Virus record (IMG/VR): IMGVR_UViG_3300020195_000009
Location: 124,001 to 188,000 of that record
Direction: 5' to 3' (one strand)
Length of the DNA: 64,000 nt
The notes beneath the pieces were generated by a model. It saw only the letters and a list, made by a program, of their open reading frames with translations. It had not been told where the DNA came from and made no database searches. Positions within the stretch are counted from its first letter, which is position 1, and each line of letters begins with the position of its first letter. The translations under genes were made by a program, and so were the position numbers. Shown here one piece after another: positions 20,318-63,224 of the stretch.

Positions 20318-21388
20318 TCAAGCCGACTCCGTCTCCTGTTTGCGGCCCGGCATCTTGCTCCAAACCGTCACGACGGTCTTGAGTAGTTCGTTGTGAATGG
20401 GATCCCCATTGAGGAACTTCTCCCAACTACCCCCACTCTGACGGAAGACCGACCTCATCACTTTGAAGTCGGTCTCTTCTGTAACGGTATCTTCCGACAC
20501 CATGTGATCCACAAGTTGACGGATGACGCGATCCCCAAAATTCAAAGGAACCTCAGGCGGGCAATCGAAGGAAGCTGCCTTCTCGTTCAACTTCTCGATG
20601 ACCGAGCCGTCATGAAGGTAAGCTTCCTCCATGGAAGGCACGAGGTACTGACTACGAAGCGTAGACGCCTCGTGCCCTACCGCTTCGGCAGCCCCTTCGA
20701 TGGCCTTCTTGAACTCGGCCTTGAGGATCTTGTCCTTCTCTTTGCGACCGGCTGGAAGCTTCGGACCCCCTGACCGAATCTTCCTCAGGCGCTCTTGGAC
20801 CTCCGTGTTCGCGTGAAGACCCCGGATGTCCTTGGCCGTGATGTCGAAGTCGGTCAGGTAGGCGTTGACTTCTTTCGCTCCCACGCACCCATCATCGTGG
20901 GAGAAGATGCAGGTCTCGCCCCCCTCCACAGAGTCGTAGGCCTTGCGGAGCGCCTTGAGGATCTGGCCGTCCGAGACCTTTTTCTCGTGCTTGACTCCAG
21001 ACTTGCCAACGTACTTGACCGTTGCTGTCCCCTTGCCGAACGACAAGTGACGCTTCTGCCAGCCTGTCACCCCAAAGTGGCCCTCATCGGCGGACCCGTC
21101 GTTTCCGACTCGCTCGTAGGTGTGGTCAATCAAGGCAACCGCAAGAGCCGTCAGCTTGGTGGACAGGTCCTTGGAACCCATGTCGGATTTGACTTTAGTT
21201 CGGAGCTTCCCCATCGATTGACGAAGCTTCTCGACACGATTGGCCTTCTCGTTGTTGCGGTTCGCGATCTGACGATCGCTATACTCGTAGACCGTCATGT
21301 CCTCACCGGACTCGGTCTTGATCTTCTTCTTGGACTTGTACCTAGCCACAACGCGAAGGGCTATCGGGTCTAGCTGGGGAATCCTCAT
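20318..21388 (-). CDS. DNA topoisomerase IB (poxvirus/bacterial-type catalytic core)
   Basis: Full catalytic pentad: ERVGN (R), GKSG (K), AKDIR (R), VGH (H), RSQYL (Y). Confidence 0.88.
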   Translation of the reverse strand: MRIPQLDPIALRVVARYKSKKKIKTESGEDMTVYEYSDRQIANRNNEKANRVEKLRQSMGKLRTKVKSDMGSKDLSTKLTALAVALIDHTYERVGNDGSADEGHFGVTGWQKRHLSFGKGTATVKYVGKSGVKHEKKVSDGQILKALRKAYDSVEGGETCIFSHDDGCVGAKEVNAYLTDFDITAKDIRGLHANTEVQERLRKIRSGGPKLPAGRKEKDKILKAEFKKAIEGAAEAVGHEASTLRSQYLVPSMEEAYLHDGSVIEKLNEKAASFDCPPEVPLNFGDRVIRQLVDHMVSEDTVTEETDFKVMRSVFRQSGGSWEKFLNGDPIHNELLKTVVTVWSKMPGRKQETESA

Positions 21389-28272: not shown

Positions 28273-29175
28273 TCACGTAATCACAAGATGAATGTCAATA
28301 TCCAGGTAGCTGTTGGAGCTGTACCCGGAGACCCTGAGTTTCTCCGTGTAGGTCCCCTGGAGGAAGTTGTCTGGGGGCACTGCGGTCACCGTGATGACGT
28401 CCGACCCCAAAGAGGCAAGCGTCCCGGAGGCCGGTAGGAAGCTGGTAAGCCAATCCGAAAGCCCCGTAAGCTTCTGGATTTGGTAATCGAGGATGGACCC
28501 CGCTGGTCCCGAGTTCTGCACCGTGAACGTCTGGACCGGAATCGACGGGAACGGGCCCGAAATAGGCTTCACGACCGAGAAGGTCAGGAGCGTGGGGAGC
28601 AGGAAGATGGTGGCCTTGGGTCGAACCACAATCGTGACCGGGAACATCTGGGGGTTGTTGACCGCCGCAGGATCTTGAACCGCGATGCTTTCAACGTACG
28701 GGCTTGAGGCCGCAAGGAGGTTAGTTGCATCCACTTCAACTTGGAACTGGCCCGATTCATTCAACGCTAGGTTGCCTACGTTGGCCGGGGTGACCCGTAC
28801 GTAGGCCGCTGAGGTGGTGAGAGTCACTCCAAGGATAGACCCGTACACCCCGTCGTTGGTGAGAAGAACAAACTCCCCAGGCCCGAACCCACGGCCCTCG
28901 TCCACGTTGAACGTGAGAGACGAAGGCGGCCCAAGCAGGATGCTCGGGGAGAAGTTGGCTCGAAGCTCGTCGATGGACTCGGCCATCGCGGCCACAACCT
29001 CCCCTGGGATGGGGATGGAGTCTCTCAGCAGGCCATAGGGAGAAACAATGTCGAGCACCGAGTAGACCGGGTTCGACTGCGACACATCCAGCCGTGTTGT
29101 CCATCGCCACTTACCGGCAGCAACGGGCAACTCGAACTTGTAGTCGTGGACCTTCAGGTTCGAGACTAGCGGCAC
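28273..29175 (-). CDS. Virion protein with two Ig-like (BACON-like) domains
   Basis: PSSLTF...TSAAYVRVTP and PTLLTF...QTFTVQNSG...WL...PASGTL...GTYTE; likely GTG start at 29175 after GAGGGA (track start 29199). Confidence 0.6.
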   Translation of the reverse strand: MPLVSNLKVHDYKFELPVAAGKWRWTTRLDVSQSNPVYSVLDIVSPYGLLRDSIPIPGEVVAAMAESIDELRANFSPSILLGPPSSLTFNVDEGRGFGPGEFVLLTNDGVYGSILGVTLTTSAAYVRVTPANVGNLALNESGQFQVEVDATNLLAASSPYVESIAVQDPAAVNNPQMFPVTIVVRPKATIFLLPTLLTFSVVKPISGPFPSIPVQTFTVQNSGPAGSILDYQIQKLTGLSDWLTSFLPASGTLASLGSDVITVTAVPPDNFLQGTYTEKLRVSGYSSNSYLDIDIHLVIT

Positions 29176-29220
29176 TTGCAGTTCCCTCTTGAACCACAAG
29201 CCATAAGAAGAAACGGGGCG

Positions 29221-29386
29221 TTAGGCGGCCTTCGAGCGAAAACTACCCAGATAATCGGCCGCTCCCTGGAGCACCCGGAGGCTCTCCCTGGCATGCCCCA
29301 AGCCGAAGTTGCAGCCTCGACAAAGGAGCCCTCGGACAGCTAGGCCCGAAGGGTCCTGAGCCGCCGCAAGTCGTACAGGCTTTCAC
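29221..29386 (-). pseudogene. Internally deleted, frameshifted endonuclease VII-type HNH homing endonuclease remnant
   Basis: GTG start reads MKACTTCGGSGPFGP; another frame then reads AVRGLLCRGCNFGLGHARESLRVLQGAADYL...TAA, the EndoVII C-terminal signature. The DHDH core is missing. Confidence 0.75.
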
Positions 29387-29398
29387 GTTGATAACCTA

Positions 29399-30028
29399 TC
29401 AGAAACAACCATCCCCACCGCGGTTTGACCACTGCGGCAAGCGAACTTCGCGCAAGATGTTGAACTTCTTGGAAGCTATACTGGAGAAAACCTTGTGGTA
29501 AGGGACGAACTTGCCCTCTTCGCCGGCACGTTTTTCCAGTGTCTTGACGGCCCCAAAGAAACGATGACGCACTCGACCTTGCGTGAGCCCGAGTCGCGTA
29601 GCGACTTCACTCTGGCAGGTCGTTTGCCACATCCCCACGAGGATATCGACGTCGATAGGTTTGAACGGAACGTCGGGGAGGTCCTGACGCATCTCATCTT
29701 CGCTGATTTGCGGAATTGAAAGAAGGAACCGTATGCGTTGTAAGCCCCGATCCAGCCGATAGCTGATCGCCGCTTGCGTGACGCCGAAAATCTCAGCGAT
29801 GTCGGCTTGGCGCTTCTTTTGGATGTAGTAGAGGAAGATGAGATCAGCCTCTCGCTCTGGGATCCGATCCAGTAGGGGCTTGACCTGGTTCTCGTAGTTG
29901 AGGGTTGATAGGAGGGGCTCTACGTTGGGCTCCTCTTCCTCATCAAGATCATCAAAGAGCCGGTCTGGGGCTGCGAATCTGTTGGCGAGTTCTGCCGGGT
30001 CAACCGAAATAGTGAAGCCGCCACTCAT
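29399..30028 (-). CDS. Transcription factor with two tandem sigma70 region-4-like HTH domains
   Basis: IPEREADLIFLYY...QADIAEIFGVTQAAISYRLDRG and QSEVATRLGLTQGRVRHRFFGA; no recognisable region 2. Confidence 0.7.
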   Translation of the reverse strand: MSGGFTISVDPAELANRFAAPDRLFDDLDEEEEPNVEPLLSTLNYENQVKPLLDRIPEREADLIFLYYIQKKRQADIAEIFGVTQAAISYRLDRGLQRIRFLLSIPQISEDEMRQDLPDVPFKPIDVDILVGMWQTTCQSEVATRLGLTQGRVRHRFFGAVKTLEKRAGEEGKFVPYHKVFSSIASKKFNILREVRLPQWSNRGGDGCF

Positions 30029-30049
30029 GGATTCTTCCTCCCGTCAAAG

Positions 30050-32095
30050 TCACTCGGAAAAGGCGAGTTGTTCTTGTCGCTTCGCAAATCCTCGTGAAGC
30101 GGTCTGAAAGAAGGGTTCCACTATCGAGTCGGCTTGGATGCTGAGCCCACCGATGACTTCGGAGGCGATCTTTGCATCAGGACTCGGAGCGATCTCATCA
30201 AACGAGAGATCGTCGCGTAGCTGCATGAGATTCAAATTGAGGCGGACCTGAGCTTCGGCCGCACGGATCTTCGCGTACTGCCCGGCGGTGATGCCAGACA
30301 AGTTGGATGCGAAGACCTCATCAACTGAACCGTAGTTTTTCAAGAGCGCCGTCAGAACTTTCGTAGGTACCCGGCCACCGACACCCGGTACCTCATCTGA
30401 ATCGTCCCCGAGTAACGCCCGAAGTTGGACCATGCGTTCGGGTGTGACTCCATATTCTTCCACAACTTTGTCCCGGTCGTAAAGGGTCTCCTGTCGATTT
30501 CCGACCTTGGGTGATAGCACGATGTCAGTCAATGTCACCAACTGTAAGAAGTCTTGGTCCGTAGAGAGGATGACGTTCCTCTGACCTTTGAGCTTGCCTC
30601 GGACAAGACAAGCGATGACGTCATCCGTTTCTTCCTCGGCGTTGAATGCTTGGGTGACACCCAGGAGGGGGAGGATGTTTCGCAGGCGACTCATCTGGCT
30701 CTCAGGGCCAACAGAGGCACCATTCAAGGACCCGTTGGCCGCTCGCTCGGCTGCTCGCTTCTCACGCCGCTTAATCTTGTACCCCTCAAAGAGGTTGATA
30801 CGACGCTGCGGGGATCCGTCCCAAACAACGTAAATTGAGGCATTTGCAAATCTCTTCTTGAGACTAGCCAGGCTTTTCAAGAACCCAAACACGAGGGAGG
30901 TGGGGTTCCCTTCTGCGTCCGTGAGGGGTTTCTTCATGGCCCCGAGGGCATGAGAGACTCGGTACGCGAGGTTGTGCCCATCGATGATGACGTTCTCGAA
31001 CATGTCCGATCTCCCTGTTAGCGCCTCAACGTTACCCACGTTACGGGCCAGCCCATTCAATCTCTGTACGATGTCTTGGAGCCACTGAGACTCAAGCATT
31101 TTTGCTTCTACTTGAGCGTTGAGTGTCGGTAAGGTGGCGAGAGCTGGGGCCGCTTGGAGGTATTGAAACCAAGCTGGACCTCGTTCTATCAACGAGTCCA
31201 TTTGATGCACAAGGCCGTATTTTTCAGCGACCTTGTCCATCACTGGAGTGGGCTTTACTTGGAGACCGAGCTTACGACTACGATCCAACCAACCACCAAA
31301 GAGTTGAACCCCTTGGTGACTATGCAACAAAAGGGTGATTGGAGGAGGGCCTGAGGGGAGCGTCATCTGACGGCGGATGTGTTTGACGCGATCCAACCGT
31401 ACAAGGCCTAGCTCGATATTACCGAGGTCTCGGACGGCCTGCTCGACCTCCCTAAACCCAGAGGGAACCCACGACAGAATGGGTTGAACCAACCGACTCC
31501 ACTCTCGGATCCGTTCGATCTTCGTCATGAACGGAGAGAATGTGGGAAGATCCGACTGGTCCTTCGAGACGAATCGGAGAAACGACCTGGGGAGCGTGAC
31601 TATGGCTTCTTTGGATCGAAGCTTGATATAGACCTGAACTGAATCGGTCTCTGGGATCTCCTCGATGATCCGGCCGTTGATGCCCTTGTAGGGGCCGTTC
31701 ATCACCTGAACTTCATCCCCTACTTCAATACCTTGTTCTGTTTCAACGTGTATTTGACGACGCATCTTGTCGATGTCCACGTCTCGAACAGTCGCCATCT
31801 CACGGTAGGTGGTCTTTCGGTCCAAAGCCCGAGCTACCGTCAGAACCGAAGCGACGTACCGCGTACCCTCAAGCCGCATATACGCAGAGTCAGGGAGGGT
31901 CCTACGTACAAAGACGTAGTTGTCGATCAGCTTGTGGATGACACGGCTATCTCCGACGATGGACACGGAGGCAGGGATGAAAATCTCGACCGTCTTGTCT
32001 CGGAATACACGAGCTAGAGCGGAGGCGAGGACCTCTGGGTCTTCGTCTTCTCCTTGAGGGGAAAGCTCTAAGACGACCCAATCACGCGTCGCCAC
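30050..32095 (-). CDS. NusG/RfaH-like (NGN+KOW) domain fused to a PolA/T5-FEN-type 5'-3' exonuclease
   Basis: N-terminal WVVL, IFIP, NYVFV and KOW IEVGDEVQVMNGPYKGING; C-terminal IIDGHN, VWDG, ETDDVIA, STDQD, GDDSD and H3TH motif. Confidence 0.85.
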   Translation of the reverse strand: MATRDWVVLELSPQGEDEDPEVLASALARVFRDKTVEIFIPASVSIVGDSRVIHKLIDNYVFVRRTLPDSAYMRLEGTRYVASVLTVARALDRKTTYREMATVRDVDIDKMRRQIHVETEQGIEVGDEVQVMNGPYKGINGRIIEEIPETDSVQVYIKLRSKEAIVTLPRSFLRFVSKDQSDLPTFSPFMTKIERIREWSRLVQPILSWVPSGFREVEQAVRDLGNIELGLVRLDRVKHIRRQMTLPSGPPPITLLLHSHQGVQLFGGWLDRSRKLGLQVKPTPVMDKVAEKYGLVHQMDSLIERGPAWFQYLQAAPALATLPTLNAQVEAKMLESQWLQDIVQRLNGLARNVGNVEALTGRSDMFENVIIDGHNLAYRVSHALGAMKKPLTDAEGNPTSLVFGFLKSLASLKKRFANASIYVVWDGSPQRRINLFEGYKIKRREKRAAERAANGSLNGASVGPESQMSRLRNILPLLGVTQAFNAEEETDDVIACLVRGKLKGQRNVILSTDQDFLQLVTLTDIVLSPKVGNRQETLYDRDKVVEEYGVTPERMVQLRALLGDDSDEVPGVGGRVPTKVLTALLKNYGSVDEVFASNLSGITAGQYAKIRAAEAQVRLNLNLMQLRDDLSFDEIAPSPDAKIASEVIGGLSIQADSIVEPFFQTASRGFAKRQEQLAFSE

Positions 32096-33602
32096 GAGAT
32101 ATCACTCCTCGATTCAACCAGAGTGTTTCAAAACCCCTTCGCCAAACGGATGGGCTAACGATGTCTCTCCCATCCCTCAACCGATGCTCATCCCAGAGGA
32201 TGGGCGCCTTTGCGTGTTTGTTCGCCGGTAAAGGGCCGGGAACTGCAAAATGATCAAACTCCCCGAGCGCACACGGATCTTGACCTGAAGGGCCCACTCC
32301 ATCGGCACGGACATCCGGCCCAACGGATCTTGGTTGAGGTATGAATTTCTGAGGTGGGGCTGGAGCTGCCAAGACCTGCGGTAGTGGAGCCTGAGCTGGG
32401 GCCGCCACTGGGAGTACAGGGGCCTGCACGGGGACCTCAGGGGTTGAGGCTGGCTCGGGTGAGATTTGTAGAGGTGCTGGGACCGCTACTGGACTTGGAG
32501 CTGGACCCAACGGTTGAAGCGGTGGGGGTTGCTGCTGTTGACGTGGAGCGATTGGGTGCTCTGAGGTGAGTTCCTCTGCCGCCATCAACACATCACAGAT
32601 CAAGCCGACTTTGGTTACATACCTTGACCGAAGGAAGCGTTCTGCGAGGCGAACAAGCCTTTGCCCCCCGTACGCCTGGAAAGCCTTTTGACCGAGATCC
32701 TTGTCGGCGAATGTGAAGTCAGCGGTCATCCCGGTTGCCAACCGGAACGAATTCATCGCGGCTTCTGCGAGACCGGAAGCCACTTCTTCGGGGGTGACTC
32801 GATCACAAGCCTTGTCTACGTAGGACAAAGCCTCTTTGGTGTCCGAGGCGATGCGCAGAAGGATCTCGTAGTAGGTCGATACAACGGAGAGGTTGAGGTT
32901 GGCTCGTACGCTCTCCACCGTTACAGGACCCATCTGGGCAACCATCTCCAGACGGTTGATTACGTCACGTACGTGACCCCCAGAGAAGTCGATGACGATG
33001 AGAAGGGCATCATCCTCGTGCTCAACCTTCTCTGACGTGAGGATGCTCTTCACCCGAGCAAGGATATCCTCTCGGGTCACCTTACGGATTGCGTACTCCT
33101 CACACCTCGACCGGATGGCGCCACGTACCTTCTCAGGTTCCGTCGTACAGAACATCCCAACGAGCTTCTTTTCCTCCAAGGGTTTGAGAAGAACGTCTTG
33201 GGCGTCCTTGCTCATCCGGTGGCACTCGTCGATGACGTAGATGCGCTTCTTGGCTCCGAAGACAGCGAAGGGGAGGTCGTCTACGATCTTTCGTACGTGT
33301 TCGATCGTCCCACGGCTAGCCGCATCCAGTTCGACGAAAGCACCGAGGTTATCATCCAAGACCCCCTTGCAGTTCTCACACTCGTTACAAGGCTCAGGGT
33401 TCGCAGGGTCGAGCTGTTGACAAAGCACGGCCCTCGCAAGGATCCGGGCTAGGGTAGTCTTCCCTTGTCCCGGACCCCCGCAAAAGATGTAGCTCGTGTC
33501 TAGGGCCGTCCCGTTACGAAGCCTCGATTTGAGGACTTGAACGGTGCCTTCTTGACCGAGGACATCGGCGAACTTGAGCGGCCTATACTTCGTATCCCAC
33601 AC
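32082..33602 (-). CDS. dnaX: DNA polymerase III clamp-loader subunit gamma/tau
   Basis: KYRP..F..V.GQ, GQGKTT, PCNECENC, ELDAAS, IDECH, LLKPLEE, IRSRC; Pro-rich tail. Confidence 0.92.
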   Translation of the reverse strand: MWDTKYRPLKFADVLGQEGTVQVLKSRLRNGTALDTSYIFCGGPGQGKTTLARILARAVLCQQLDPANPEPCNECENCKGVLDDNLGAFVELDAASRGTIEHVRKIVDDLPFAVFGAKKRIYVIDECHRMSKDAQDVLLKPLEEKKLVGMFCTTEPEKVRGAIRSRCEEYAIRKVTREDILARVKSILTSEKVEHEDDALLIVIDFSGGHVRDVINRLEMVAQMGPVTVESVRANLNLSVVSTYYEILLRIASDTKEALSYVDKACDRVTPEEVASGLAEAAMNSFRLATGMTADFTFADKDLGQKAFQAYGGQRLVRLAERFLRSRYVTKVGLICDVLMAAEELTSEHPIAPRQQQQPPPLQPLGPAPSPVAVPAPLQISPEPASTPEVPVQAPVLPVAAPAQAPLPQVLAAPAPPQKFIPQPRSVGPDVRADGVGPSGQDPCALGEFDHFAVPGPLPANKHAKAPILWDEHRLRDGRDIVSPSVWRRGFETLWLNRGVISRGDA

Positions 33603-55515: not shown

Positions 55516-57572
<2,057 letters not shown>

Positions 57573-57793: not shown

Positions 57794-59200
57794 TCATTCG
57801 GCCCCTTTGATGTTCGCGACCGGCATCATGCGGTGGGCGATCTTGGCGATGCCTTCATCTTCGAGAACCGCAAGAACGGCATCGAGGTCCTTGTAGACGT
57901 GCTTGCATTCGTCGACCGGGATGTTCTTGTGGTTCGAGATGATCCCTTCGATCGTCACACCTGCAAACGTTCGCTGGACGTCGTGCATCTCAGCGTTGAT
58001 TCGATCCTGCTTGGGACCCAGGCTCTTCTTTGCCTTGCTTCGCCCAAGAGTCCGACCCGACCCGTGGTTGACGGAGTACCCGGACTTGGAGGCTCCAGCC
58101 TGAGCGAATAGGATCGCAGCTCCGTCGTACATCGAACCGGGGATGCAGCACGGGTGTCCTGTGTCCGCCCACTTCGTCCCCACGAGATCGGGATGCCCAG
58201 CCGGGAAGGCACGGGTTGCCCCTTTACGGTGGACGAAGCCCTTCTTCGTGGTGCCGTCGGGGAGGACCAGGGTTTCCTCTTGGACGAGGTTGTGGCTGAT
58301 CTCGTAGTAGACCTCGCCCTCAACGTTGAAAACCTCTTGGAGAGCCTCCTGGATGCCTTTGACGATGACGTGGCGGTTGGCCACGGCAAAGTTGGCAGCG
58401 CTGTTGTGGTAGCGCCAGTAGTCCTTCCCAACCTGCTCGTCCATCCGAAGCCAGGACTCTTCACGTCGGTTACTGGGAAGACCACGGGCCTTGGCCCCCT
58501 CGAAGAAGAAGTGATCGGCGGTTTGCCAGCCGTACCCCCGGCTCCCGCAATGGATCATCACCCAGACTTCTGCTGTGTCCCGATCCACCTGCATCTCGAT
58601 GAAATGGTTGCCTCCGCCGACACTACCAAGCTGAGGGATGACCTTCGAGTAGGCCTTCTGGACCATCTTGAAGTCGGTACCCTCCGGGATCGGGATGTAC
58701 TGACGTTCGCATAGGTCGGCTGAGACCCCCAAGGCCTTGGCTCCGAACCGGAGGATCTCATCGGCCTGGTTCTGGTTGAAGTGGGGCATGAGGTTGGGTC
58801 GTTCGGACCCAACCCCGGTCGCGATTCGCTTCTCGACCTCCTTGACCCAACGCTCCCGAGGGTACCGACCCCGAACCCCACTCGCCGTGAGCCCAGGGAC
58901 CTTCATGTAAAGGACCCCACACGAAATGTCGTAACCAGAACCCGACTGGATGATCGTGTCCTCGGTTACAACGACCCCACCGACAGGAATTCCGTATCCG
59001 ATATGACAATCGGGCATAAGGTAGGCGCCGATGACTCCCTCATAGGAGGCGCTCGTCTTGATCTGCTCCCACATGTTCTCTTCCGAGGAGTTGTAGAGAT
59101 CCTCGGACAAAAAGGCGTGCGCCTCCACCTTCATCTCGCCGACTTTTGGCAAGACATAGTGGTTGGAGCCGACCTTTTGCGCTGTGTACTTGAGGGACAT
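57794..59200 (-). CDS. rtcB: RtcB RNA ligase
   Basis: MPDCHIGYGIPVG, GYDISCG, GSVGGGNHFIE, HCGSRG, HN, HRKGAT, PGSM, HGSGR, YKD. Confidence 0.95.
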   Translation of the reverse strand: MSLKYTAQKVGSNHYVLPKVGEMKVEAHAFLSEDLYNSSEENMWEQIKTSASYEGVIGAYLMPDCHIGYGIPVGGVVVTEDTIIQSGSGYDISCGVLYMKVPGLTASGVRGRYPRERWVKEVEKRIATGVGSERPNLMPHFNQNQADEILRFGAKALGVSADLCERQYIPIPEGTDFKMVQKAYSKVIPQLGSVGGGNHFIEMQVDRDTAEVWVMIHCGSRGYGWQTADHFFFEGAKARGLPSNRREESWLRMDEQVGKDYWRYHNSAANFAVANRHVIVKGIQEALQEVFNVEGEVYYEISHNLVQEETLVLPDGTTKKGFVHRKGATRAFPAGHPDLVGTKWADTGHPCCIPGSMYDGAAILFAQAGASKSGYSVNHGSGRTLGRSKAKKSLGPKQDRINAEMHDVQRTFAGVTIEGIISNHKNIPVDECKHVYKDLDAVLAVLEDEGIAKIAHRMMPVANIKGAE

Positions 59201-59855: not shown

Positions 59856-61445
59856 TTACCAGCGCTTGCTGCGGACCTTACCGACTTTTGCCTTGGAGGG
59901 CTCCGCAGGTGAGGCCGAGAGGGGCTCCCCTGAGGGTGCTACTAGGGACGGCCCCAGAGAGACCCCCCCAAGCAAGATGCTACCTCCGGCGCCATCCCCC
60001 ACCCCGCCGCTCCACGAGCCCCCTACGAGACCCCCAAGGTCGACGGGCGGGGCCGGGACTGCCGGGACTGCCGGGTCTGGTACCACCGGACCCGTGAACT
60101 CCTGGACCATCATGTCCTGCTGGGCGTTCGAGACCGAGTAGTTGTTCGAGACGAGGACCTCTTGATCCTCGGATGCCAGGCCGGAAGCTCGAAGGCCCCG
60201 CGTCATGGCCCTCCTCATCCCTGCCCGGTTTCCAGAGGTATCTCGATAGGAATCCTGGTTCAGATACATGGCGTTGACGTGCCCAGCAACAGCGGCAACA
60301 CCGACATGCCCTCGGGTATTAATCTCACCCCGAACATCCGCTAGAGCCGCCGCAGCCGCCACGAAGTTGCCACCACGGGCAAACTTCTCGGCTTCGACCT
60401 GAGCTTCCACGAGTTGGGCTCGGGCCACGACCTCATCGACTTCCTTCGTGGGGGTCTTCTGCTCGTCCCCGGCCTTGACGAACTGAACTTTAGCCTTGGC
60501 TTCGGCCGTCTTTGTGACGAGCTTCCCATCGGCGTCGATGACCTGGTACTTGAGCTTCACGTCAACAGCGTTGACCTGACGAGGCCCTGGTTGCTTCTGG
60601 GAGGCCAGCTTCACCATCAAGACGAGGTTCACATTCTCCTCGCTGAGAATGTGTGGAATCTTGACCTGAACTTCACCCGTGGTCTCCTCTTCGACATCGG
60701 CATCCGAGAGGACTTTTGTAACGAGGTGCCCGTTGTGAGGAATCACCTCAATCACGACGTCTTGAGCGTAGGTGGAAAGCAGACCCCCAAGCTCCTTCCC
60801 GAAGGCGGCAAGAGCCCCATCCGGGTCTCGGACGTAAGCGTAGTTGCCGTTCCCCTTCGTGGAGAGAGCCTGTAGGAGGTCTTGGTTGGCGTCGTCGCCG
60901 TACCCGAAGGCGGACACAGACGCCCTCCCAGCCTGCTTCTCCAGAAGACCATTCAAGCCCACAGGGTCCGTCACGCCATGGGTAGGCTGACCGTCCGTGA
61001 ACATGATGACCCGGACGAGGGTAGCCTCGGGAAGGTCCATCTCGTTCGCCGTTTGGAGACCGAGGAGCATCCCCGACGAGAAGTTGGTACCGCCTTCGAC
61101 CTTGAACCGGCCGACGAGGGCTTTGAGAGCCTCCTTGTTCTCGGGGATCATCTTCACCGGCTTGGCGTCGACACGAGCCGAATTGGAGAAGCTGATAATA
61201 CCGAGGTAATCCTCGGAGGAGAGGTGCTCAATGAGCTTCAGGATTGACTGCTTGGCGTAGGCCAGCTTGTCACCACCCATCGACCCCGAGATGTCGAGGA
61301 CCGGGAGGATGCAAAGCGGTGGGCGCTTGGCCTGCCAGTCGCCCTTGGGGGCGGTAAGGGAGACGACCAGGTGGAGGTCGTTGTCCTTGTCGTGGCGGAC
61401 GGATTCGTACGTGAATTGGGGCTTGATTTCCATGGGCTTCACCAT
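59856..61445 (-). CDS. von Willebrand factor A domain protein
   Basis: MIDAS LDISGSM, GGTN, FTDG, GYG, GNY; Ig-like flanks and low-complexity tail. Confidence 0.88.
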   Translation of the reverse strand: MVKPMEIKPQFTYESVRHDKDNDLHLVVSLTAPKGDWQAKRPPLCILPVLDISGSMGGDKLAYAKQSILKLIEHLSSEDYLGIISFSNSARVDAKPVKMIPENKEALKALVGRFKVEGGTNFSSGMLLGLQTANEMDLPEATLVRVIMFTDGQPTHGVTDPVGLNGLLEKQAGRASVSAFGYGDDANQDLLQALSTKGNGNYAYVRDPDGALAAFGKELGGLLSTYAQDVVIEVIPHNGHLVTKVLSDADVEEETTGEVQVKIPHILSEENVNLVLMVKLASQKQPGPRQVNAVDVKLKYQVIDADGKLVTKTAEAKAKVQFVKAGDEQKTPTKEVDEVVARAQLVEAQVEAEKFARGGNFVAAAAALADVRGEINTRGHVGVAAVAGHVNAMYLNQDSYRDTSGNRAGMRRAMTRGLRASGLASEDQEVLVSNNYSVSNAQQDMMVQEFTGPVVPDPAVPAVPAPPVDLGGLVGGSWSGGVGDGAGGSILLGGVSLGPSLVAPSGEPLSASPAEPSKAKVGKVRSKRW

Positions 61446-62560: not shown

Positions 62561-62578
62561 GACTTTAGACCTAATTTG

Positions 62579-62925
62579 TGGAGCTGCGGGGTACTGCCCC
62601 CCGGTCCTCCAGAAGTCCGATGACGCCTTCATTCACGTACGTAGTCGAAGTATCCCCCTCGACTGAGTTCGTAGATTCGGCCACGACCTATTCCCGCTGT
62701 TCCTCTCGACCTTTGCACCGCAAGACACGTGCTCGGTCCAGCCCTAGTGGTTGACAGGCTCTCCGCTACCAGGACGATCTGGCGGGAACCCGGCCTTCAG
62801 GCCGCCTTGAGAGCGGTGAAAGCGAAAGCGTTGTCGTTGGCGACTAGCTTGTGCTCGATTGAACAGGTCGAGCGCTGTTGTACGCAGATGTCACTTCTTT
62901 CCAGAGTCGAATCTATTTCAGCCCC
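62579..62925 (-). ncRNA. ssrA: tmRNA (one-piece), tag peptide ANDNAFAFTALKAA
   Basis: 5' GGGGCTGAAATAGATTCGAC; 3' CAGCTCC-A with G3-U wobble; resume codon GCC at 62841 to TGA at 62797; T-arm CGGGG-GGCAGTA-CCCCG. Confidence 0.9.
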
Positions 62926-62973
62926 TTTCGTACTCCTACCCTACACCAAGAAGCATCGAAGAGCTAGTGCTAG

Positions 62974-63058
62974 TACCCGTAGAGGGAGTCGAACCCTCAG
63001 CGCCCACAAGGAGCCGCGAATTTTAAATTCACTGCGTCTGCCATTCCGCCACACGGGC
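62974..63058 (-). tRNA. tRNA-Leu(TAA)
   Basis: GCCCGTG/TACGGGT acceptor, TGGCGGAATGGCAGACGC D-arm, loop TT-TAA-AA, long variable arm, GGTTCGACTCC. Confidence 0.9.
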
Positions 63059-63062
63059 CTAG

Positions 63063-63143
63063 TACTCAGGAAGGGGATCGAACCCTCACGGTTTTACCCG
63101 GTGGATTTTGAATCCACTGCGTCTGCCATTCCGCCACCTGAGC
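63063..63143 (-). tRNA. tRNA-Leu(CAA)
   Basis: GCTCAGG/CCTGAGT acceptor, loop TT-CAA-AA, variable arm CGGGTAAAACCG, GGTTCGATCCC. Confidence 0.9.
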
Positions 63144-63152
63144 AAGAAACAG

Positions 63153-63224
63153 TGCGCCATCTAGGAGTTGAACCTAGCCACCCCGCATATCAGACGGGGC
63201 CGTTCACCGGAAACATCATGGCGC
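63153..63224 (-). tRNA. Atypical tRNA-Ile(GAT)
   Basis: GCGCCAT/ATGGCGC acceptor plus A, loop CT-GAT-AT, T-arm CTAGG-TTCAACT-CCTAG; G at position 8 and an unusual D-arm. Confidence 0.7.

What the first reader, a model, noticed from the sequence alone, without database searches (positions are those of the whole stretch)
29399..32095. NusG-5'-3' exonuclease fusion next to a tandem sigma-4 protein: candidate replication-coupled late-transcription (or 'torpedo') system
Seen: one uninterrupted 681-aa ORF joins a full NusG/RfaH-like NGN+KOW module (aa ~1-175), a ~190-aa helical linker and a PolA/T5-FEN-type 5'-3' nuclease with its acidic catalytic motifs intact (IIDG, WDG, ETDD, TDQD, GDDSD). It is the penultimate gene of the replication operon, followed by a protein with two sigma region-4 HTHs, and then the virion genes begin. 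Known: NGN domains bind the RNA polymerase clamp; FEN-family enzymes remove RNA primers and flaps; T4 couples late transcription to replication through its clamp; in eukaryotes Spt5 (the NusG homologue) works with the 5'-3' exonuclease Xrn2/Rat1 in torpedo termination. Inference: the phage tethers a 5' nuclease to host RNAP, either to link Okazaki processing/nicks to late promoters, to clear R-loops, or to terminate or degrade host transcripts. I know of no described protein with this architecture.
Basis: partly seen in the sequence, partly recalled or inferred. Interest (0 to 1): 0.88.

Follow-up and report, generated by a model that had tools for sequence, protein, structure and literature searches.

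The report
NusG–flap nuclease fusion in huge phages
A clade of uncultivated huge phages joins a NusG-type transcription factor to a DNA-replication flap nuclease in one gene; the fusion is real and conserved, but its two halves began as neighbouring genes and can still work apart, so the proposed "nuclease tethered to RNA polymerase" role remains untested.

Summary
- a NusG-like NGN+KOW module (aa 1-177)
- a poorly conserved helical linker (aa 178-364)
- a Pol I/FenA-type 5' flap nuclease with all its acidic motifs (aa 365-665)

The next gene encodes a 209-aa sigma region-4 protein, and virion genes follow.

The window is part of a 286-kb IMG/VR phage contig. The same full-length architecture occurs in more than 118 protein clusters and about 50 viral contigs (37-99% identity, contigs up to 512 kb). 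The order clamp loader / fusion / sigma-4 is invariant, so this is not an assembly artefact.

Comparative data change the reading:
- In outgroup phages the NusG-like gene (180 aa) and the FEN gene (313 aa) are separate, overlapping neighbours. One outgroup has NusG-like then sigma-4 with no FEN between.
- The fusion, with its linker, arose once and was split again at least twice.
- The FEN's own Shine-Dalgarno site and start codon (M365) are kept inside the fused ORF, so free FEN is probably still made.

Best reading: a phage-specific NusG paralog acts with the sigma-4 protein at the head of the late block, fused to the replisome's Okazaki-fragment nuclease. Physical coupling of RNA polymerase to the nuclease is plausible but unproven. 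The "torpedo" idea has no support. I found no paper describing this architecture.

The parts
30050..32095 (-). Fused gene, 681 aa: NGN-KOW-linker-FEN (GTG start at 32095, stop at 30050-30052)
   Evidence: ORF list and translation. Full-length relatives at 37-99% identity.
31760..32095 (-). NGN domain (aa 1-112) of a divergent NusG paralog
   Evidence: Pfam NusG 19.8 bits. PDB profile hit to NusG at E=6.8e-10. hhalign to E. coli NusG. NCBIfam nusG, UpxY, LoaP and RfaH all far below their cut-offs. pLDDT about 90.
31565..31738 (-). KOW domain (aa 120-177), the best-conserved part (63% mean pairwise identity). The LRSK...TLPR loop is invariant.
   Evidence: Pfam KOW 24.6 bits, above the cut-off. 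Conservation per region.
31004..31564 (-). Helical linker (aa 178-364). It is weakly conserved (23% identity), 138-217 aa long in relatives and absent from the unfused outgroup. W199 and R345 are nearly invariant.
   Evidence: AF2 helices at pLDDT 40-80. Conservation and lengths. Outgroup gap of 12 aa.
31011..31015 (-). Internal Shine-Dalgarno-like GGGAG, 8 nt upstream of ATG-365
   Evidence: Anti-SD duplex energy -8.2 kcal/mol. That is within the top 5% of internal sites and equals the gene's own start at -8.4. An SD-like motif is conserved at this distance in 24 of 24 loci although the encoded residues differ.
31001..31003 (-). In-frame internal start codon (M365), the probable start of a free ~317-aa FEN
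   Evidence: The codon is ATG, GTG or TTG in 31 of 34 distinct family sequences, and the other three have a start codon 1-2 codons upstream. The same codon is the real FEN start in split relatives L078 and L052.
30101..31003 (-). 5'-3' flap endonuclease/exonuclease domain (aa 365-665) with an intact active site
   Evidence: Pfam 93 and 46.6 bits. Foldseek hits: M. smegmatis FenA 6c33 at E=4e-18, then Taq Pol I, ExoIX and T5 FEN. Invariant acidic residues.
30053..30100 (-). Disordered C-terminal tail (aa 666-681). A clade-specific GF.K motif lies in the tail and a conserved L-x-x-F-F lies just before it. It is a candidate partner-binding (clamp?) peptide, untested.
   Evidence: C-termini of 61 relatives. 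pLDDT below 50.
29399..30028 (-). Neighbouring 209-aa protein. It has a sigma region 4 (aa 50-103; 29720-29881), a second HTH (aa 124-170; 29519-29659) and no region 2. The N-terminal motif GYVIPVDPxELANRF and the C-terminal motif FNILREVKLPQWxNRGGD are invariant.
   Evidence: Pfam Sigma70_r4 50.9 bits. SigF r4 at E=1.8e-6. Foldseek TM 0.84, rmsd 1.0 A. Second HTH 19 bits. Alignment A5. The protein follows the fusion in every locus.
29329..29352 (-). Terminator-like hairpin just after the sigma-4 gene (9 pairs, weak T tail)
   Evidence: Consensus scan only; the number of such sites in the region is not above shuffles.
29201..29215 (-). Conserved non-coding T-rich element CGTTTCTTCTTATGG (family consensus G-TTT-CTTTTAT), 26 nt upstream of the probable GTG start (29175) of the first post-sigma-4 gene
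   Evidence: Seen upstream of the w308 homologue in the 21 divergent loci used to build the matrix. It occurs once in the 64-kb window: score 20.5, with the next best 14.9 inside a gene. It is usually the only strong coding-strand hit in a ~14-kb family locus. It stays with that gene even where other genes are inserted, and it is absent in the outgroups.
32082..33602 (-). Upstream neighbour: clamp-loader tau/gamma-like ATPase (506 aa), whose end overlaps the fusion's start
   Evidence: Pfam DNA_pol3_delta2 89.9 bits. Conserved synteny.

Best explanation
This is a bifunctional gene of a clade of huge phages. It was made by fusing two ancestrally adjacent, translationally coupled genes.

**N-terminal half (inferred role).**
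- It is a phage-specific NusG paralog (NGN+KOW).
- By analogy with operon-specific NusG paralogs, it is inferred to bind the clamp helices of the host RNA polymerase.
- It is inferred to act with the adjacent sigma-4-only protein on the long co-directional virion gene block.
- That block starts just downstream, behind a unique conserved T-rich element.

**C-terminal half (inferred role).**
- It is an active Pol I/FenA-type flap nuclease.
- It is inferred to remove RNA primers and 5' flaps for the phage's own Pol III-type replisome.

**Products (inferred).** Two are probably made:
- the full-length fusion;
- a free ~36-kDa FEN, made from a retained internal SD and start codon at M365.

**Effect of the fusion (inferred, weakest step).** A 140-220-aa helical linker holds one copy of the nuclease near transcribing polymerase. 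Equivalently, it concentrates the NusG-like factor on nicked, replicating phage DNA. This loosely couples late transcription with lagging-strand processing.

**Shown versus inferred.**
- Shown: domain identities, the intact active site, conservation, gene order, fusion and fission history, and the internal start signals.
- Inferred: RNAP binding, antitermination, primer removal, dual products, and any functional coupling.
For: **Domains.**

**Conserved fusion.**
- At least 118 protein clusters cover 92-100% of the query.
- Forty of 44 non-redundant loci are fused.
- Synteny clamp loader / fusion / sigma-4 / w308 / w525 / w683 holds in all ~50 IMG/VR loci.

**Ancestral separate genes.**
- L075: NusG-like 180 aa and FEN 313 aa with a GTGA overlap, then sigma-4.
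- LR745208.1: NusG-like 207 aa directly followed by a sigma-4 orthologue at 41% identity.

**One fusion, at least two fissions.** Tree; split loci.

**Internal start.**
- A start codon lies at or within 2 codons of M365 in all family loci, with an SD-like motif although the residues there vary.
- The SD is stronger than the gene background in 24 of 24 loci.
- Energy is -8.2 kcal/mol against an internal mean of -2.95.
- The same ATG is the real start in the split forms.

**Replisome context.** Primase Toprim, beta clamp, tau/delta/delta' clamp loader, NAD ligase, RecD2-type helicase and RecA are present, and no Pol I was found in the window.

**Late block.** Terminase, portal and capsid genes lie downstream. 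The T-rich element is unique and conserved.

**Precedent.** Specialised NusG paralogs are encoded next to their target operons (PMC7819879).
Against: - No experiment or complex model shows RNAP binding. The NGN hallmark strand reads L-I-D-N-Y-V-F-V where E. coli NusG has F-F-P-G-Y-V-L-V, so the contact surface has diverged.
- Scores to every curated NusG subfamily are far below the cut-offs.
- The host is unknown.
- Internal initiation is inferred from sequence only. The loci are phylogenetically related, so the combined p-value overstates independence.
- Only 64 kb of the 286-kb genome was seen, so another FEN, RNase H or Pol I could exist elsewhere.
- The T-rich element could be a promoter, a factor-loading site or a 5'-UTR signal. 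Nothing links it directly to these proteins.
- Synteny of the whole block is conserved, so adjacency alone is weak evidence of a functional link.
Confidence: 0.45

Rival explanations
1. Neutral 'neighbour fusion'. The NusG-like factor and the FEN have unrelated jobs, late transcription and Okazaki maturation respectively. They were joined only because their genes overlapped by a few bases. The linker merely keeps the two domains from interfering, and nothing depends on their being one chain.
For: - In the outgroup the genes overlap by 4 nt, so a single frameshift fuses them.
- The internal SD and start are retained.
- Two independent fissions were tolerated.
- The linker is the least conserved part, at 23% identity and variable length.
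- One outgroup (LR745208.1) has NusG-like next to sigma-4 with no FEN between them.
Against: - A 140-220-aa linker was gained with the fusion and kept across the whole clade.
- The linker is retained on the NusG-like half in the fission lineages (three divergent members in one, plus L052) rather than decaying.
- The fused state persists in 40 of 44 lineages, down to 36% identity.
Confidence: 0.28
2. Replication-coupled late transcription, working like phage T4. The FEN half, perhaps through its C-terminal tail, binds nicks, flaps or the phage sliding clamp on replicated DNA. The NGN half binds the beta' clamp helices of RNAP, and the sigma-4 protein binds the beta flap. Together they deliver polymerase to the late promoter only on replicating genomes.
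For: - Gene order puts the beta clamp, clamp loader, fusion and sigma-4 in one conserved block, immediately before the late genes and a unique conserved cis element.
- The neighbour has sigma region 4 but no region 2.
- A short motif is conserved in the disordered C-terminal tail.
- From my own knowledge, not tested here: NGN and sigma region 2 use the same site on beta', and FEN-family enzymes commonly bind sliding clamps.
Against: - No canonical clamp-binding motif was found. The L-x-x-F-F lies in a confidently folded helix, and its spacing from the Gln does not fit a PIP box.
- No homology to T4 gp33 or gp55 was detected.
- NusG-family proteins act in elongation, not initiation.
- The fission variants and the unfused outgroups argue that the bridge is not obligatory.
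Confidence: 0.15
3. The NGN-KOW module carries the 5'-3' nuclease on the elongation complex so that it degrades nascent or hybridised RNA. The result would be termination, host shut-off or R-loop removal. This would be a covalent version of NusG-KOW/Rho or Spt5-KOW/FttA.
For: - In bacteria and archaea the KOW domain of NusG/Spt5 bridges the elongation complex to the termination effector, Rho or the FttA ribonuclease (PMC11616081).
- Here the KOW is the most conserved part and is followed covalently by a nuclease.
- From my own knowledge: FEN-type enzymes can remove RNA from RNA:DNA hybrids.
Against: - The nuclease is closest to structure-specific DNA flap enzymes (FenA, the Pol I 5' domain, ExoIX, T5 FEN), not to single-strand exoribonucleases.
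- A nuclease tethered to the polymerase cannot 'chase' it from a distant 5' end.
- Its genomic context is the replisome.
- The two genes are unfused, and the linker absent, in the outgroups.
Confidence: 0.07
4. Artefact: a fusion produced by assembly error, a sequencing frameshift or recent stop-codon loss in this one contig.
For: - Three IMG/VR relatives (L042, L043, L052) show the two halves in different frames.
- One junction (L043) lies next to an A7 run.
Against: - The fused ORF recurs in independent samples and assemblers (JGI, ENA, Logan, NCBI) at 37-99% identity.
- The split state is itself inherited in a clade with proper start codons and ATGA-type overlaps.
Confidence: 0.01

Closest known systems
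Operon-specific NusG paralogs (RfaH, LoaP, UpxY, TaA, ActX)
   Same: - A two-domain NGN+KOW core that is colinear with E. coli NusG.
- Weak but end-to-end matches to the nusG, UpxY, LoaP and RfaH models.
- The gene lies next to a long co-directional gene block, as described for several paralogs (PMC7819879).
   Different: - It is phage-encoded.
- Scores are far below every subfamily cut-off.
- It is followed by a 140-220-aa helical linker and a nuclease.
- The KOW loop motif (LRSK...TLPR) differs from NusG.
- No recruitment site has been demonstrated.
Stand-alone bacterial and phage flap endonucleases: M. smegmatis FenA, the Pol I 5'-nuclease domain, E. coli ExoIX (Xni), T5 D15
   Same: - Same fold: Foldseek E=4e-18 to 1e-12, target TM 0.71-0.82.
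- Both Pfam domains score above their cut-offs.
- It has the full set of acidic metal ligands and the arch Y-K-x-x-R.
   Different: - It carries an N-terminal NGN-KOW-linker.
- In this clade the H3TH glycine motif reads PGV-P-R-VP instead of G-[IV]-G.
- The window protein has an extra insertion in the arch region.
Stand-alone phage NusG-like proteins (PHROG 6386 'transcription antiterminator'; UniProt A0A6J5PZH6)
   Same: - The NGN+KOW module matches PHROG 6386 at E=1.5e-7.
- There is a structural hit in BFVD.
- About 165-190-aa stand-alone relatives dominate the wider family.
   Different: - Those proteins lack both the linker and the nuclease.
- No BFVD entry covers the whole architecture; query TM is at most 0.36.
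NusG-KOW/Rho and Spt5-KOW/FttA termination bridges
   Same: The logic is the same. NGN sits on the polymerase and the KOW connects to an RNA-directed effector, which in archaea is a 5'-3' nuclease (PMC11616081).
   Different: - Here the link is covalent.
- The effector is a FEN/PIN-like DNA flap nuclease, not a helicase or a beta-CASP ribonuclease.
- No evidence for a role in termination was obtained.
Phage T4 late transcription (gp45 clamp, gp33, gp55)
   Same: - Replication genes sit next to late-transcription factors.
- A sigma-fragment-like protein is present.
- 'Minimal' single-HTH sigma factors and gp33 are described for jumbo phages (PMC7824862).
   Different: - No sequence or fold homology to gp33 or gp55 was found.
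- The clamp here is beta-type (weak DnaN match).
- Clamp binding was not tested.
Genes with in-frame internal starts giving two products (for example T7 gene 4A/4B; from my own knowledge)
   Same: An SD and a start codon lie inside an ORF, at a domain boundary.
   Different: The dual products here are only predicted.

Membership tests
NusG/Spt5 family | N-terminal NGN alpha/beta domain | tested here: met
   - The family profile hits NusG structures: 2lq8 at E=6.8e-10, and Aquifex, M. tuberculosis and E. coli NusG are also listed.
- hhalign to E. coli NusG gives probability 88%.
- The AF2 model has pLDDT about 90, and Foldseek hits NusG at E=8.8e-9.
- The Pfam NusG score for the window protein alone is 19.8, below the 22.2 cut-off. 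Some relatives carry PF02357.
NusG/Spt5 family | KOW beta-barrel after the NGN | tested here: met
   - Pfam KOW scores 24.6 bits against a 22.3 cut-off.
- The G-D-x-V-x-V-x-x-G-P-Y-x-G motif aligns with the NusG KOW.
NusG/Spt5 family | NGN binds the RNAP beta' clamp helices and bridges the cleft | not testable with these tools
   - No complex prediction or binding assay was available, and the host RNAP is unknown.
- In the hallmark strand L56, Y60 and F62 are invariant, but the F-P of NusG is replaced.
Defined NusG subfamilies (NusG, RfaH, LoaP, UpxY) | Score above NCBIfam's curated cut-off | tested here: not met
   Scores against cut-offs:
- nusG 40.6 vs 135.7
- UpxY 36.1 vs 100
- LoaP 28.9 vs 125
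- RfaH 20 vs 144.5

It is a separate, divergent paralog family.
5'-3' exonuclease / FEN (PIN-like) family | N-terminal resolvase-like nuclease domain plus the H3TH/SAM-fold domain | tested here: met
   - PF02739 scores 93 bits and PF01367 scores 46.6 bits, both above their cut-offs.
- Foldseek hits FenA, Taq Pol I, ExoIX and T5 FEN.
5'-3' exonuclease / FEN (PIN-like) family | Conserved acidic metal-binding residues and the helical-arch Lys/Arg | tested here: met
   - D372, D426, E488, E489, D491, D513, D515, D564 and D567 are invariant in 61 sequences, as are Y439, K440 and R443.
- Their assignment to the canonical sites is by motif, not by superposition.
5'-3' exonuclease / FEN (PIN-like) family | Structure-specific nuclease activity | not testable with these tools
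   This needs an enzyme assay.
Sigma-70 family (neighbouring 209-aa protein) | Region 4 HTH (-35 / beta-flap binding) | tested here: met
   - Pfam Sigma70_r4 scores 50.9 bits.
- SigF r4 matches at E=1.8e-6.
- Foldseek gives TM 0.84 and rmsd 1.0 A.
Sigma-70 family (neighbouring 209-aa protein) | Region 2 (core binding, -10 recognition and melting) | tested here: not met
   - No region 2 or region 3 match appears in Pfam or NCBIfam.
- All NCBIfam sigma matches cover only model positions that correspond to region 4.
- The protein is too short. It is not a complete sigma factor.
   - The C-terminal half scored alone gives Sigma70_r4 at 19 bits, below the 24.1 cut-off.
- AF2 shows a confident helical HTH-like domain at aa 124-186.
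T4-type clamp-coupled late transcription | gp55- and gp33-like factors carrying a clamp-binding tail | not tested
   - No matches to such families appeared in the Pfam or PHROG scans of the neighbourhood.
- The tail motifs are only candidates.

The most novel reading that the evidence does not exclude
The full-length protein is a covalent counterpart of the NusG-KOW/Rho and Spt5-KOW/FttA bridges. The NGN rides on the host elongation complex and the linker presents a flap nuclease to DNA or RNA structures at or behind the polymerase. This could trim 5' flaps or R-loop RNA where transcription meets the phage's replication forks. It could equally load the antitermination factor only on nicked, replicating genomes. 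Either way, late gene expression would be physically coupled to lagging-strand processing without any T4-like gp33/gp55 system. The linker is retained after gene fission, which would then reflect a non-covalent NusG-FEN complex.
Probability: 0.2. Interest if true: 0.85.

Novelty: new variant of a known kind. Interest (0 to 1): 0.6.

Why it matters
**For transcription biology.** NusG/Spt5 is the only transcription factor conserved across all life. It normally recruits its partners (Rho, the ribosome, FttA) non-covalently through the KOW domain. A conserved lineage in which the KOW is followed in the same chain by a replication nuclease would be the first covalent NusG-nuclease pairing, if the link is functional. 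It offers a natural handle on how transcription and lagging-strand DNA processing are coordinated on a very large phage genome.

**Value even under the neutral reading.**
- The locus defines a new, sizeable family of phage NusG paralogs.
- These paralogs are invariably paired with a region-4-only sigma fragment and, in the fused clade, with a unique cis element at the head of the virion genes.
- That makes a compact and testable late-transcription module for uncultivated huge phages.
- The retained internal start is a clear example of how a gene fusion can keep producing the original stand-alone enzyme.

Tried and rejected
- **Bacterial and archaeal genomes.** Two scans of GTDB species representatives found no fused homologue, only one unrelated FEN. 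The long contigs are therefore phage, not cellular.
- **GenBank phages.** tblastn finds only the FEN half. The exception is LR745208.1, which holds an unfused NusG-like gene.
- **Clamp-binding motif.** I looked for one in the FEN C-terminus. The conserved Q-x4-[IL]-x-x-F-F does not fit PIP-box or QL[SD]LF spacing, and it lies in a confidently folded helix. It is left as a candidate only.
- **Repeated late promoter.** I tested whether the T-rich element is one. A PWM scan finds it once in 64 kb, so it is not a repeated promoter class.
- **Conserved RNA hairpin downstream of that element.**
  - RNAalifold gives no consensus.
  - Single-sequence folds show a hairpin in 7-8 of 12 loci, with z-scores from -4.1 to +0.9. 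This is inconclusive.
  - Rfam has no match there.
- **Foldseek of the sigma-4 model.** It gave only weak E-values (at least 0.05) because the domain is small. The identification rests on TM score, rmsd and the sequence profile.
- **Literature.** Six searches found no paper on a NusG-nuclease fusion or on NusG in huge or jumbo phages. The jumbo-phage review PMC7824862 does not mention NusG.
- **Sources of relatives.** Cluster look-ups gave no organism names or accessions.

Full report
**1. What is there**

On the minus strand, window 30050-32095 is a single 681-aa ORF. It has a GTG start that overlaps the end of the preceding clamp-loader gene. A 209-aa ORF follows at 29399-30028.

Pfam places four matches on the long protein:

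| Pfam family | Residues | Bits | Cut-off |
|---|---|---|---|
| NusG | 6-112 | 19.8 | 22.2 (below) |
| KOW | 125-155 | 24.6 | 22.3 (above) |
| 5_3_exonuc_N | 369-549 | 93 | 34.3 (above) |
| 5_3_exonuc | 550-633 | 46.6 | 40 (above) |

The borderline NGN call is secured by independent tests:
- A profile of 30 relatives finds Thermotoga NusG (2lq8) at E=6.8e-10, along with NusG from Aquifex, M. tuberculosis and E. coli.
- hhalign aligns family positions 4-154 with E. coli NusG 7-164 at probability 88% and E=2.9e-6.
- NCBIfam's nusG model matches end to end at E=2.3e-10.
- PHROG 6386 'transcription antiterminator' matches at E=1.5e-7.

An AlphaFold2 model built on 61 relatives has mean pLDDT 83.5. 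Confidence is above 90 for NGN, KOW and the nuclease. The 180-residue linker is helical at pLDDT 40-80.

Foldseek against the PDB returns these hits:
- M. smegmatis FenA (E=4e-18), Taq Pol I, ExoIX and T5 FEN for the C-terminal half
- a NusG model (E=8.8e-9) for the N-terminal half

So are Y439, K440 and R443 of the helical arch.

**2. Where it comes from and how common it is**

The window is identical to part of IMGVR_UViG_3300020195_000009, a 286-kb viral contig.
- A search of 5.8 billion proteins returned 120 top hits. Of these, 118 cover 92-100% of the query at 37-99% identity. They come from JGI, ENA, Logan and NCBI assemblies, on contigs of up to 549 kb.
- JGI's pipeline already labels many of them '5'-3' exonuclease/transcription antitermination factor NusG'.
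- About 50 IMG/VR contigs (100-512 kb) carry the fusion.
- One relative lies in NCBI assembly GCA_902730345.1.
- No homologue was found in 185,579 bacterial and archaeal species genomes.
- No GenBank phage record, and no BFVD viral structure, has the whole architecture.

This is therefore a core gene of a clade of uncultivated huge phages and not an artefact.

**3. Context**

The whole window is transcribed leftwards.

Upstream of the fusion lie these genes:
- a weak DnaN-like clamp and a DnaG-Toprim protein
- a phage metallopeptidase
- the tau/gamma-like clamp loader, and further up delta and delta'
- an NAD-dependent ligase and a RecD2-type helicase
- RecA, SbcCD-like and PD-(D/E)XK nucleases
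- a class II ribonucleotide reductase, GroEL and RtcB

This is a Pol III-type replisome and recombination block. No Pol I was seen in the window.

Downstream of the sigma-4 gene come three conserved genes without family matches. They are followed by large terminase, a type IB topoisomerase, portal and an HK97-type capsid protein.

In every family locus the order is clamp loader / fusion / sigma-4 / w308 / w525 / w683. The sigma-4 protein (47-83% identity) is better conserved than the fusion (36-65%).

**4. The neighbour**

- Its residues 50-103 are a bona fide sigma region 4. The evidence is Pfam 50.9 bits, SigF region 4 at E=1.8e-6, and Foldseek TM 0.84 with rmsd 1.0 A.
- A second helix-turn-helix at about 124-170 reaches only 19 bits for the same model.
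- There is no region 2.
- Invariant N- and C-terminal peptides, GYVIPVDPxELANRF and FNILREVKLPQWxNRGGD, suggest conserved partners.

It is a sigma fragment, not a sigma factor. 'Tandem sigma-4' is only partly supported.

**5. Evolutionary history, which changes the interpretation**

*Outgroups with separate genes.*
- In a more distant clade (L075, 177-kb contig) the same position holds a 180-aa NusG-like gene. A separate 313-aa FEN gene follows, whose GTG start overlaps the upstream stop (GTGA). Then comes the sigma-4 gene. There is no linker.
- In the published 485-kb phage LR745208.1 a 207-aa NusG-like gene (32% identity) is followed directly by the sigma-4 orthologue (41% identity). No FEN lies between them.
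- An exhaustive profile search finds 502 clusters of this NGN-KOW family. The closest ~65 are mostly 520-690 aa and fused. The rest are about 165-190 aa and stand-alone.

*Secondary fissions inside the fused clade.*
- Four loci have the gene split just before the nuclease: L042, L043, L078 and L052. All have proper start codons, and some have ATGA-type overlaps.
- The NusG-like half keeps the linker, giving proteins of 287-337 aa.

*Tree.* A maximum-likelihood tree of the concatenated NGN-KOW and FEN parts was rooted on the unfused form.
- The split loci fall in two separate, well-supported positions among 40 fused ones.
- The minimum history is therefore one fusion and two fissions.

*Conservation by part* (mean pairwise identity):

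| Part | Identity |
|---|---|
| KOW | 63% |
| FEN | 52% |
| NGN | 49% |
| Linker (138-217 aa) | 23% |

**6. A retained internal start**

- Five codons before the I-D-G motif, the codon aligned with M365 is ATG (24), GTG (5) or TTG (2) in 31 of 34 distinct family sequences. The other three have a start codon one or two codons upstream.
- GTG makes up only 27% of Val codons in these genes, and TTG only 22% of Leu codons.
- A GGAG/GGA-type motif lies 6-12 nt upstream even though the encoded residues there differ between lineages.
- Its predicted pairing with the anti-SD is stronger than the gene's own background in 24 of 24 loci. The Fisher p-value is about 4e-8, but the loci are related, so this overstates independence.
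- In the window the site scores -8.2 kcal/mol. Internal codons average -2.95, and the gene's annotated start scores -8.4.
- In the split relatives this very codon, with GGAG 9 nt upstream, is the FEN start.

I infer that the fused gene still yields a free ~317-aa FEN as well as the full-length protein. This is sequence-based inference only.

**7. A cis element at the head of the late block**

- Between the sigma-4 gene and the next gene lies CGTTTCTTCTTATGG (29215-29201, minus strand). It is 26 nt upstream of the probable GTG start at 29175. The ORF list's TTG at 29199 is probably not the real start, judging from relatives.
- The element (consensus G-TTT-CTTTTAT, with TT...TTAT invariant) lies upstream of the w308 homologue in the 21 divergent loci used to build the matrix.
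- In the position-matrix scan it is usually the only strong coding-strand hit in a family locus, always just upstream of that gene. It stays there where other genes have been inserted after sigma-4. It is absent from the outgroups.
- It occurs once in the 64-kb window.
- The majority form contains TTCTTT, which fits the TTNTTT non-template-strand motif recognised by the NGN of B. subtilis NusG (PMC8060035). In T-rich sequence this may be coincidence.
- A hairpin that presents the SD follows in many loci but not all, and it has no alignment-level support.
- A terminator-like hairpin sits just after the sigma-4 stop, but such sites are not enriched in the region.

The element may be a late promoter, a loading or pause site for the NusG-like factor, or a leader signal. 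I could not discriminate between these.

**8. How it most likely works**

*Shown:*
- a divergent NusG paralog and an intact flap nuclease in one conserved ORF
- ancestral separateness of the two genes
- a clade-specific linker
- a retained internal start signal
- invariant pairing with a region-4-only protein
- a position between the replisome genes and the virion genes

*Inferred from family knowledge:*
- The NGN binds RNAP clamp helices (10.1101/324400; PMC7819879). It may act like the operon-specific paralogs that are encoded beside their long target operons.
- The FEN removes primers and flaps for a replisome that lacks Pol I in the sequence seen.

*Weakest step: whether the covalent link matters.*
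- For: the linker was gained with the fusion, persists down to 36% identity, and is kept even after fission.
- Against: fusion of 4-nt-overlapping neighbours is mechanically easy, the free FEN start is preserved, fission was tolerated twice, and the linker sequence drifts.

| Reading | Confidence |
|---|---|
| Bifunctional gene with loose coupling (best explanation) | 0.45 |
| Neutral fusion | 0.28 |
| T4-like clamp-coupled late transcription | 0.15 |
| Torpedo or R-loop idea | 0.07 |
| Artefact | 0.01 |

The last active model has a conceptual precedent in Spt5-KOW/FttA (PMC11616081). However, the nuclease type and the genomic context speak against it.

**9. Novelty**

Both domains belong to well-known families, and stand-alone phage NusG-like proteins exist. 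Three things are new:
- the conserved NGN-KOW-linker-FEN architecture
- its history of fusion and fission
- the NusG-like/sigma-4 module of this huge-phage clade

Six literature searches, and two reviews read in full text, gave no description of it. Automatic annotation has recorded the domain pair without comment. I rate it a new variant of a known kind, of moderate to high interest because it makes transcription-replication coupling in huge phages directly testable.

Noticed in passing
window 29201-29215 (-): A unique non-coding T-rich element, CGTTTCTTCTTATGG (family consensus G-TTT-CTTTTAT). It lies 26 nt upstream of the probable GTG start (29175) of the first gene after sigma-4. It is conserved upstream of that gene across divergent family loci and absent in the outgroups. 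It may be a late promoter, a NusG-like loading or pause site, or a leader signal.
   Followed up: partly
window 31001-31015 (-): A conserved in-frame start codon (M365) with an SD-like GGGAG inside the fused ORF, at the linker/FEN boundary. It predicts a second product, free FEN.
   Followed up: yes
window 29173-29199 (-): The mechanical ORF start of the 308-aa gene (TTG at 29199) is probably wrong. Relatives start at the codon aligned with GTG 29175, which has an AAGAGGG SD upstream.
   Followed up: partly
window 29160-29200 (-) and the equivalent in loci L004, L022, L024, L033: A hairpin that presents the SD in its loop, just before the start codon of the first post-sigma-4 gene. The arms differ between loci. 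It is present in 7-8 of 12 loci (z from -4.1 to +0.9), and RNAalifold finds no consensus.
   Followed up: partly
window 62576-62925 (-), 62973-63224 (-): A phage-encoded tmRNA (Rfam 76.9 bits), next to tRNA-Leu(taa), tRNA-Leu(caa) and tRNA-Ile(gat).
   Followed up: no
window 55516-57195 (-), 57794-59200 (-): A phage-encoded GroEL-type chaperonin (Cpn60, 209 bits) and an RtcB RNA ligase (290 bits) lie upstream of the replication block.
   Followed up: no
window 20318-21388 (-): A eukaryotic-type topoisomerase IB catalytic core (Pfam Topoisom_I, 78.5 bits) is encoded directly downstream of the large terminase gene.
   Followed up: no
L074:7185-9071 (LR745208.1): The clamp-loader orthologue of this related 485-kb phage appears to carry an intein. 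The HINT and intein-splicing matches at aa 153-280 interrupt the AAA+ domain.
   Followed up: no
window 29399-30028 (-): The sigma-4 protein has invariant terminal peptides, N-terminal GYVIPVDPxELANRF and C-terminal FNILREVKLPQWxNRGGD. They look like docking motifs for unknown partners.
   Followed up: no
L047, L053 (sigma-4 orthologues), alignment A5 columns 180-202: Two lineages carry a CxxC...CxxC insertion, a possible zinc ribbon, between the two HTH domains of the sigma-4 protein.
   Followed up: no
window 59856-61445 (-): A 529-aa protein with a von Willebrand factor A domain (60 bits).
   Followed up: no
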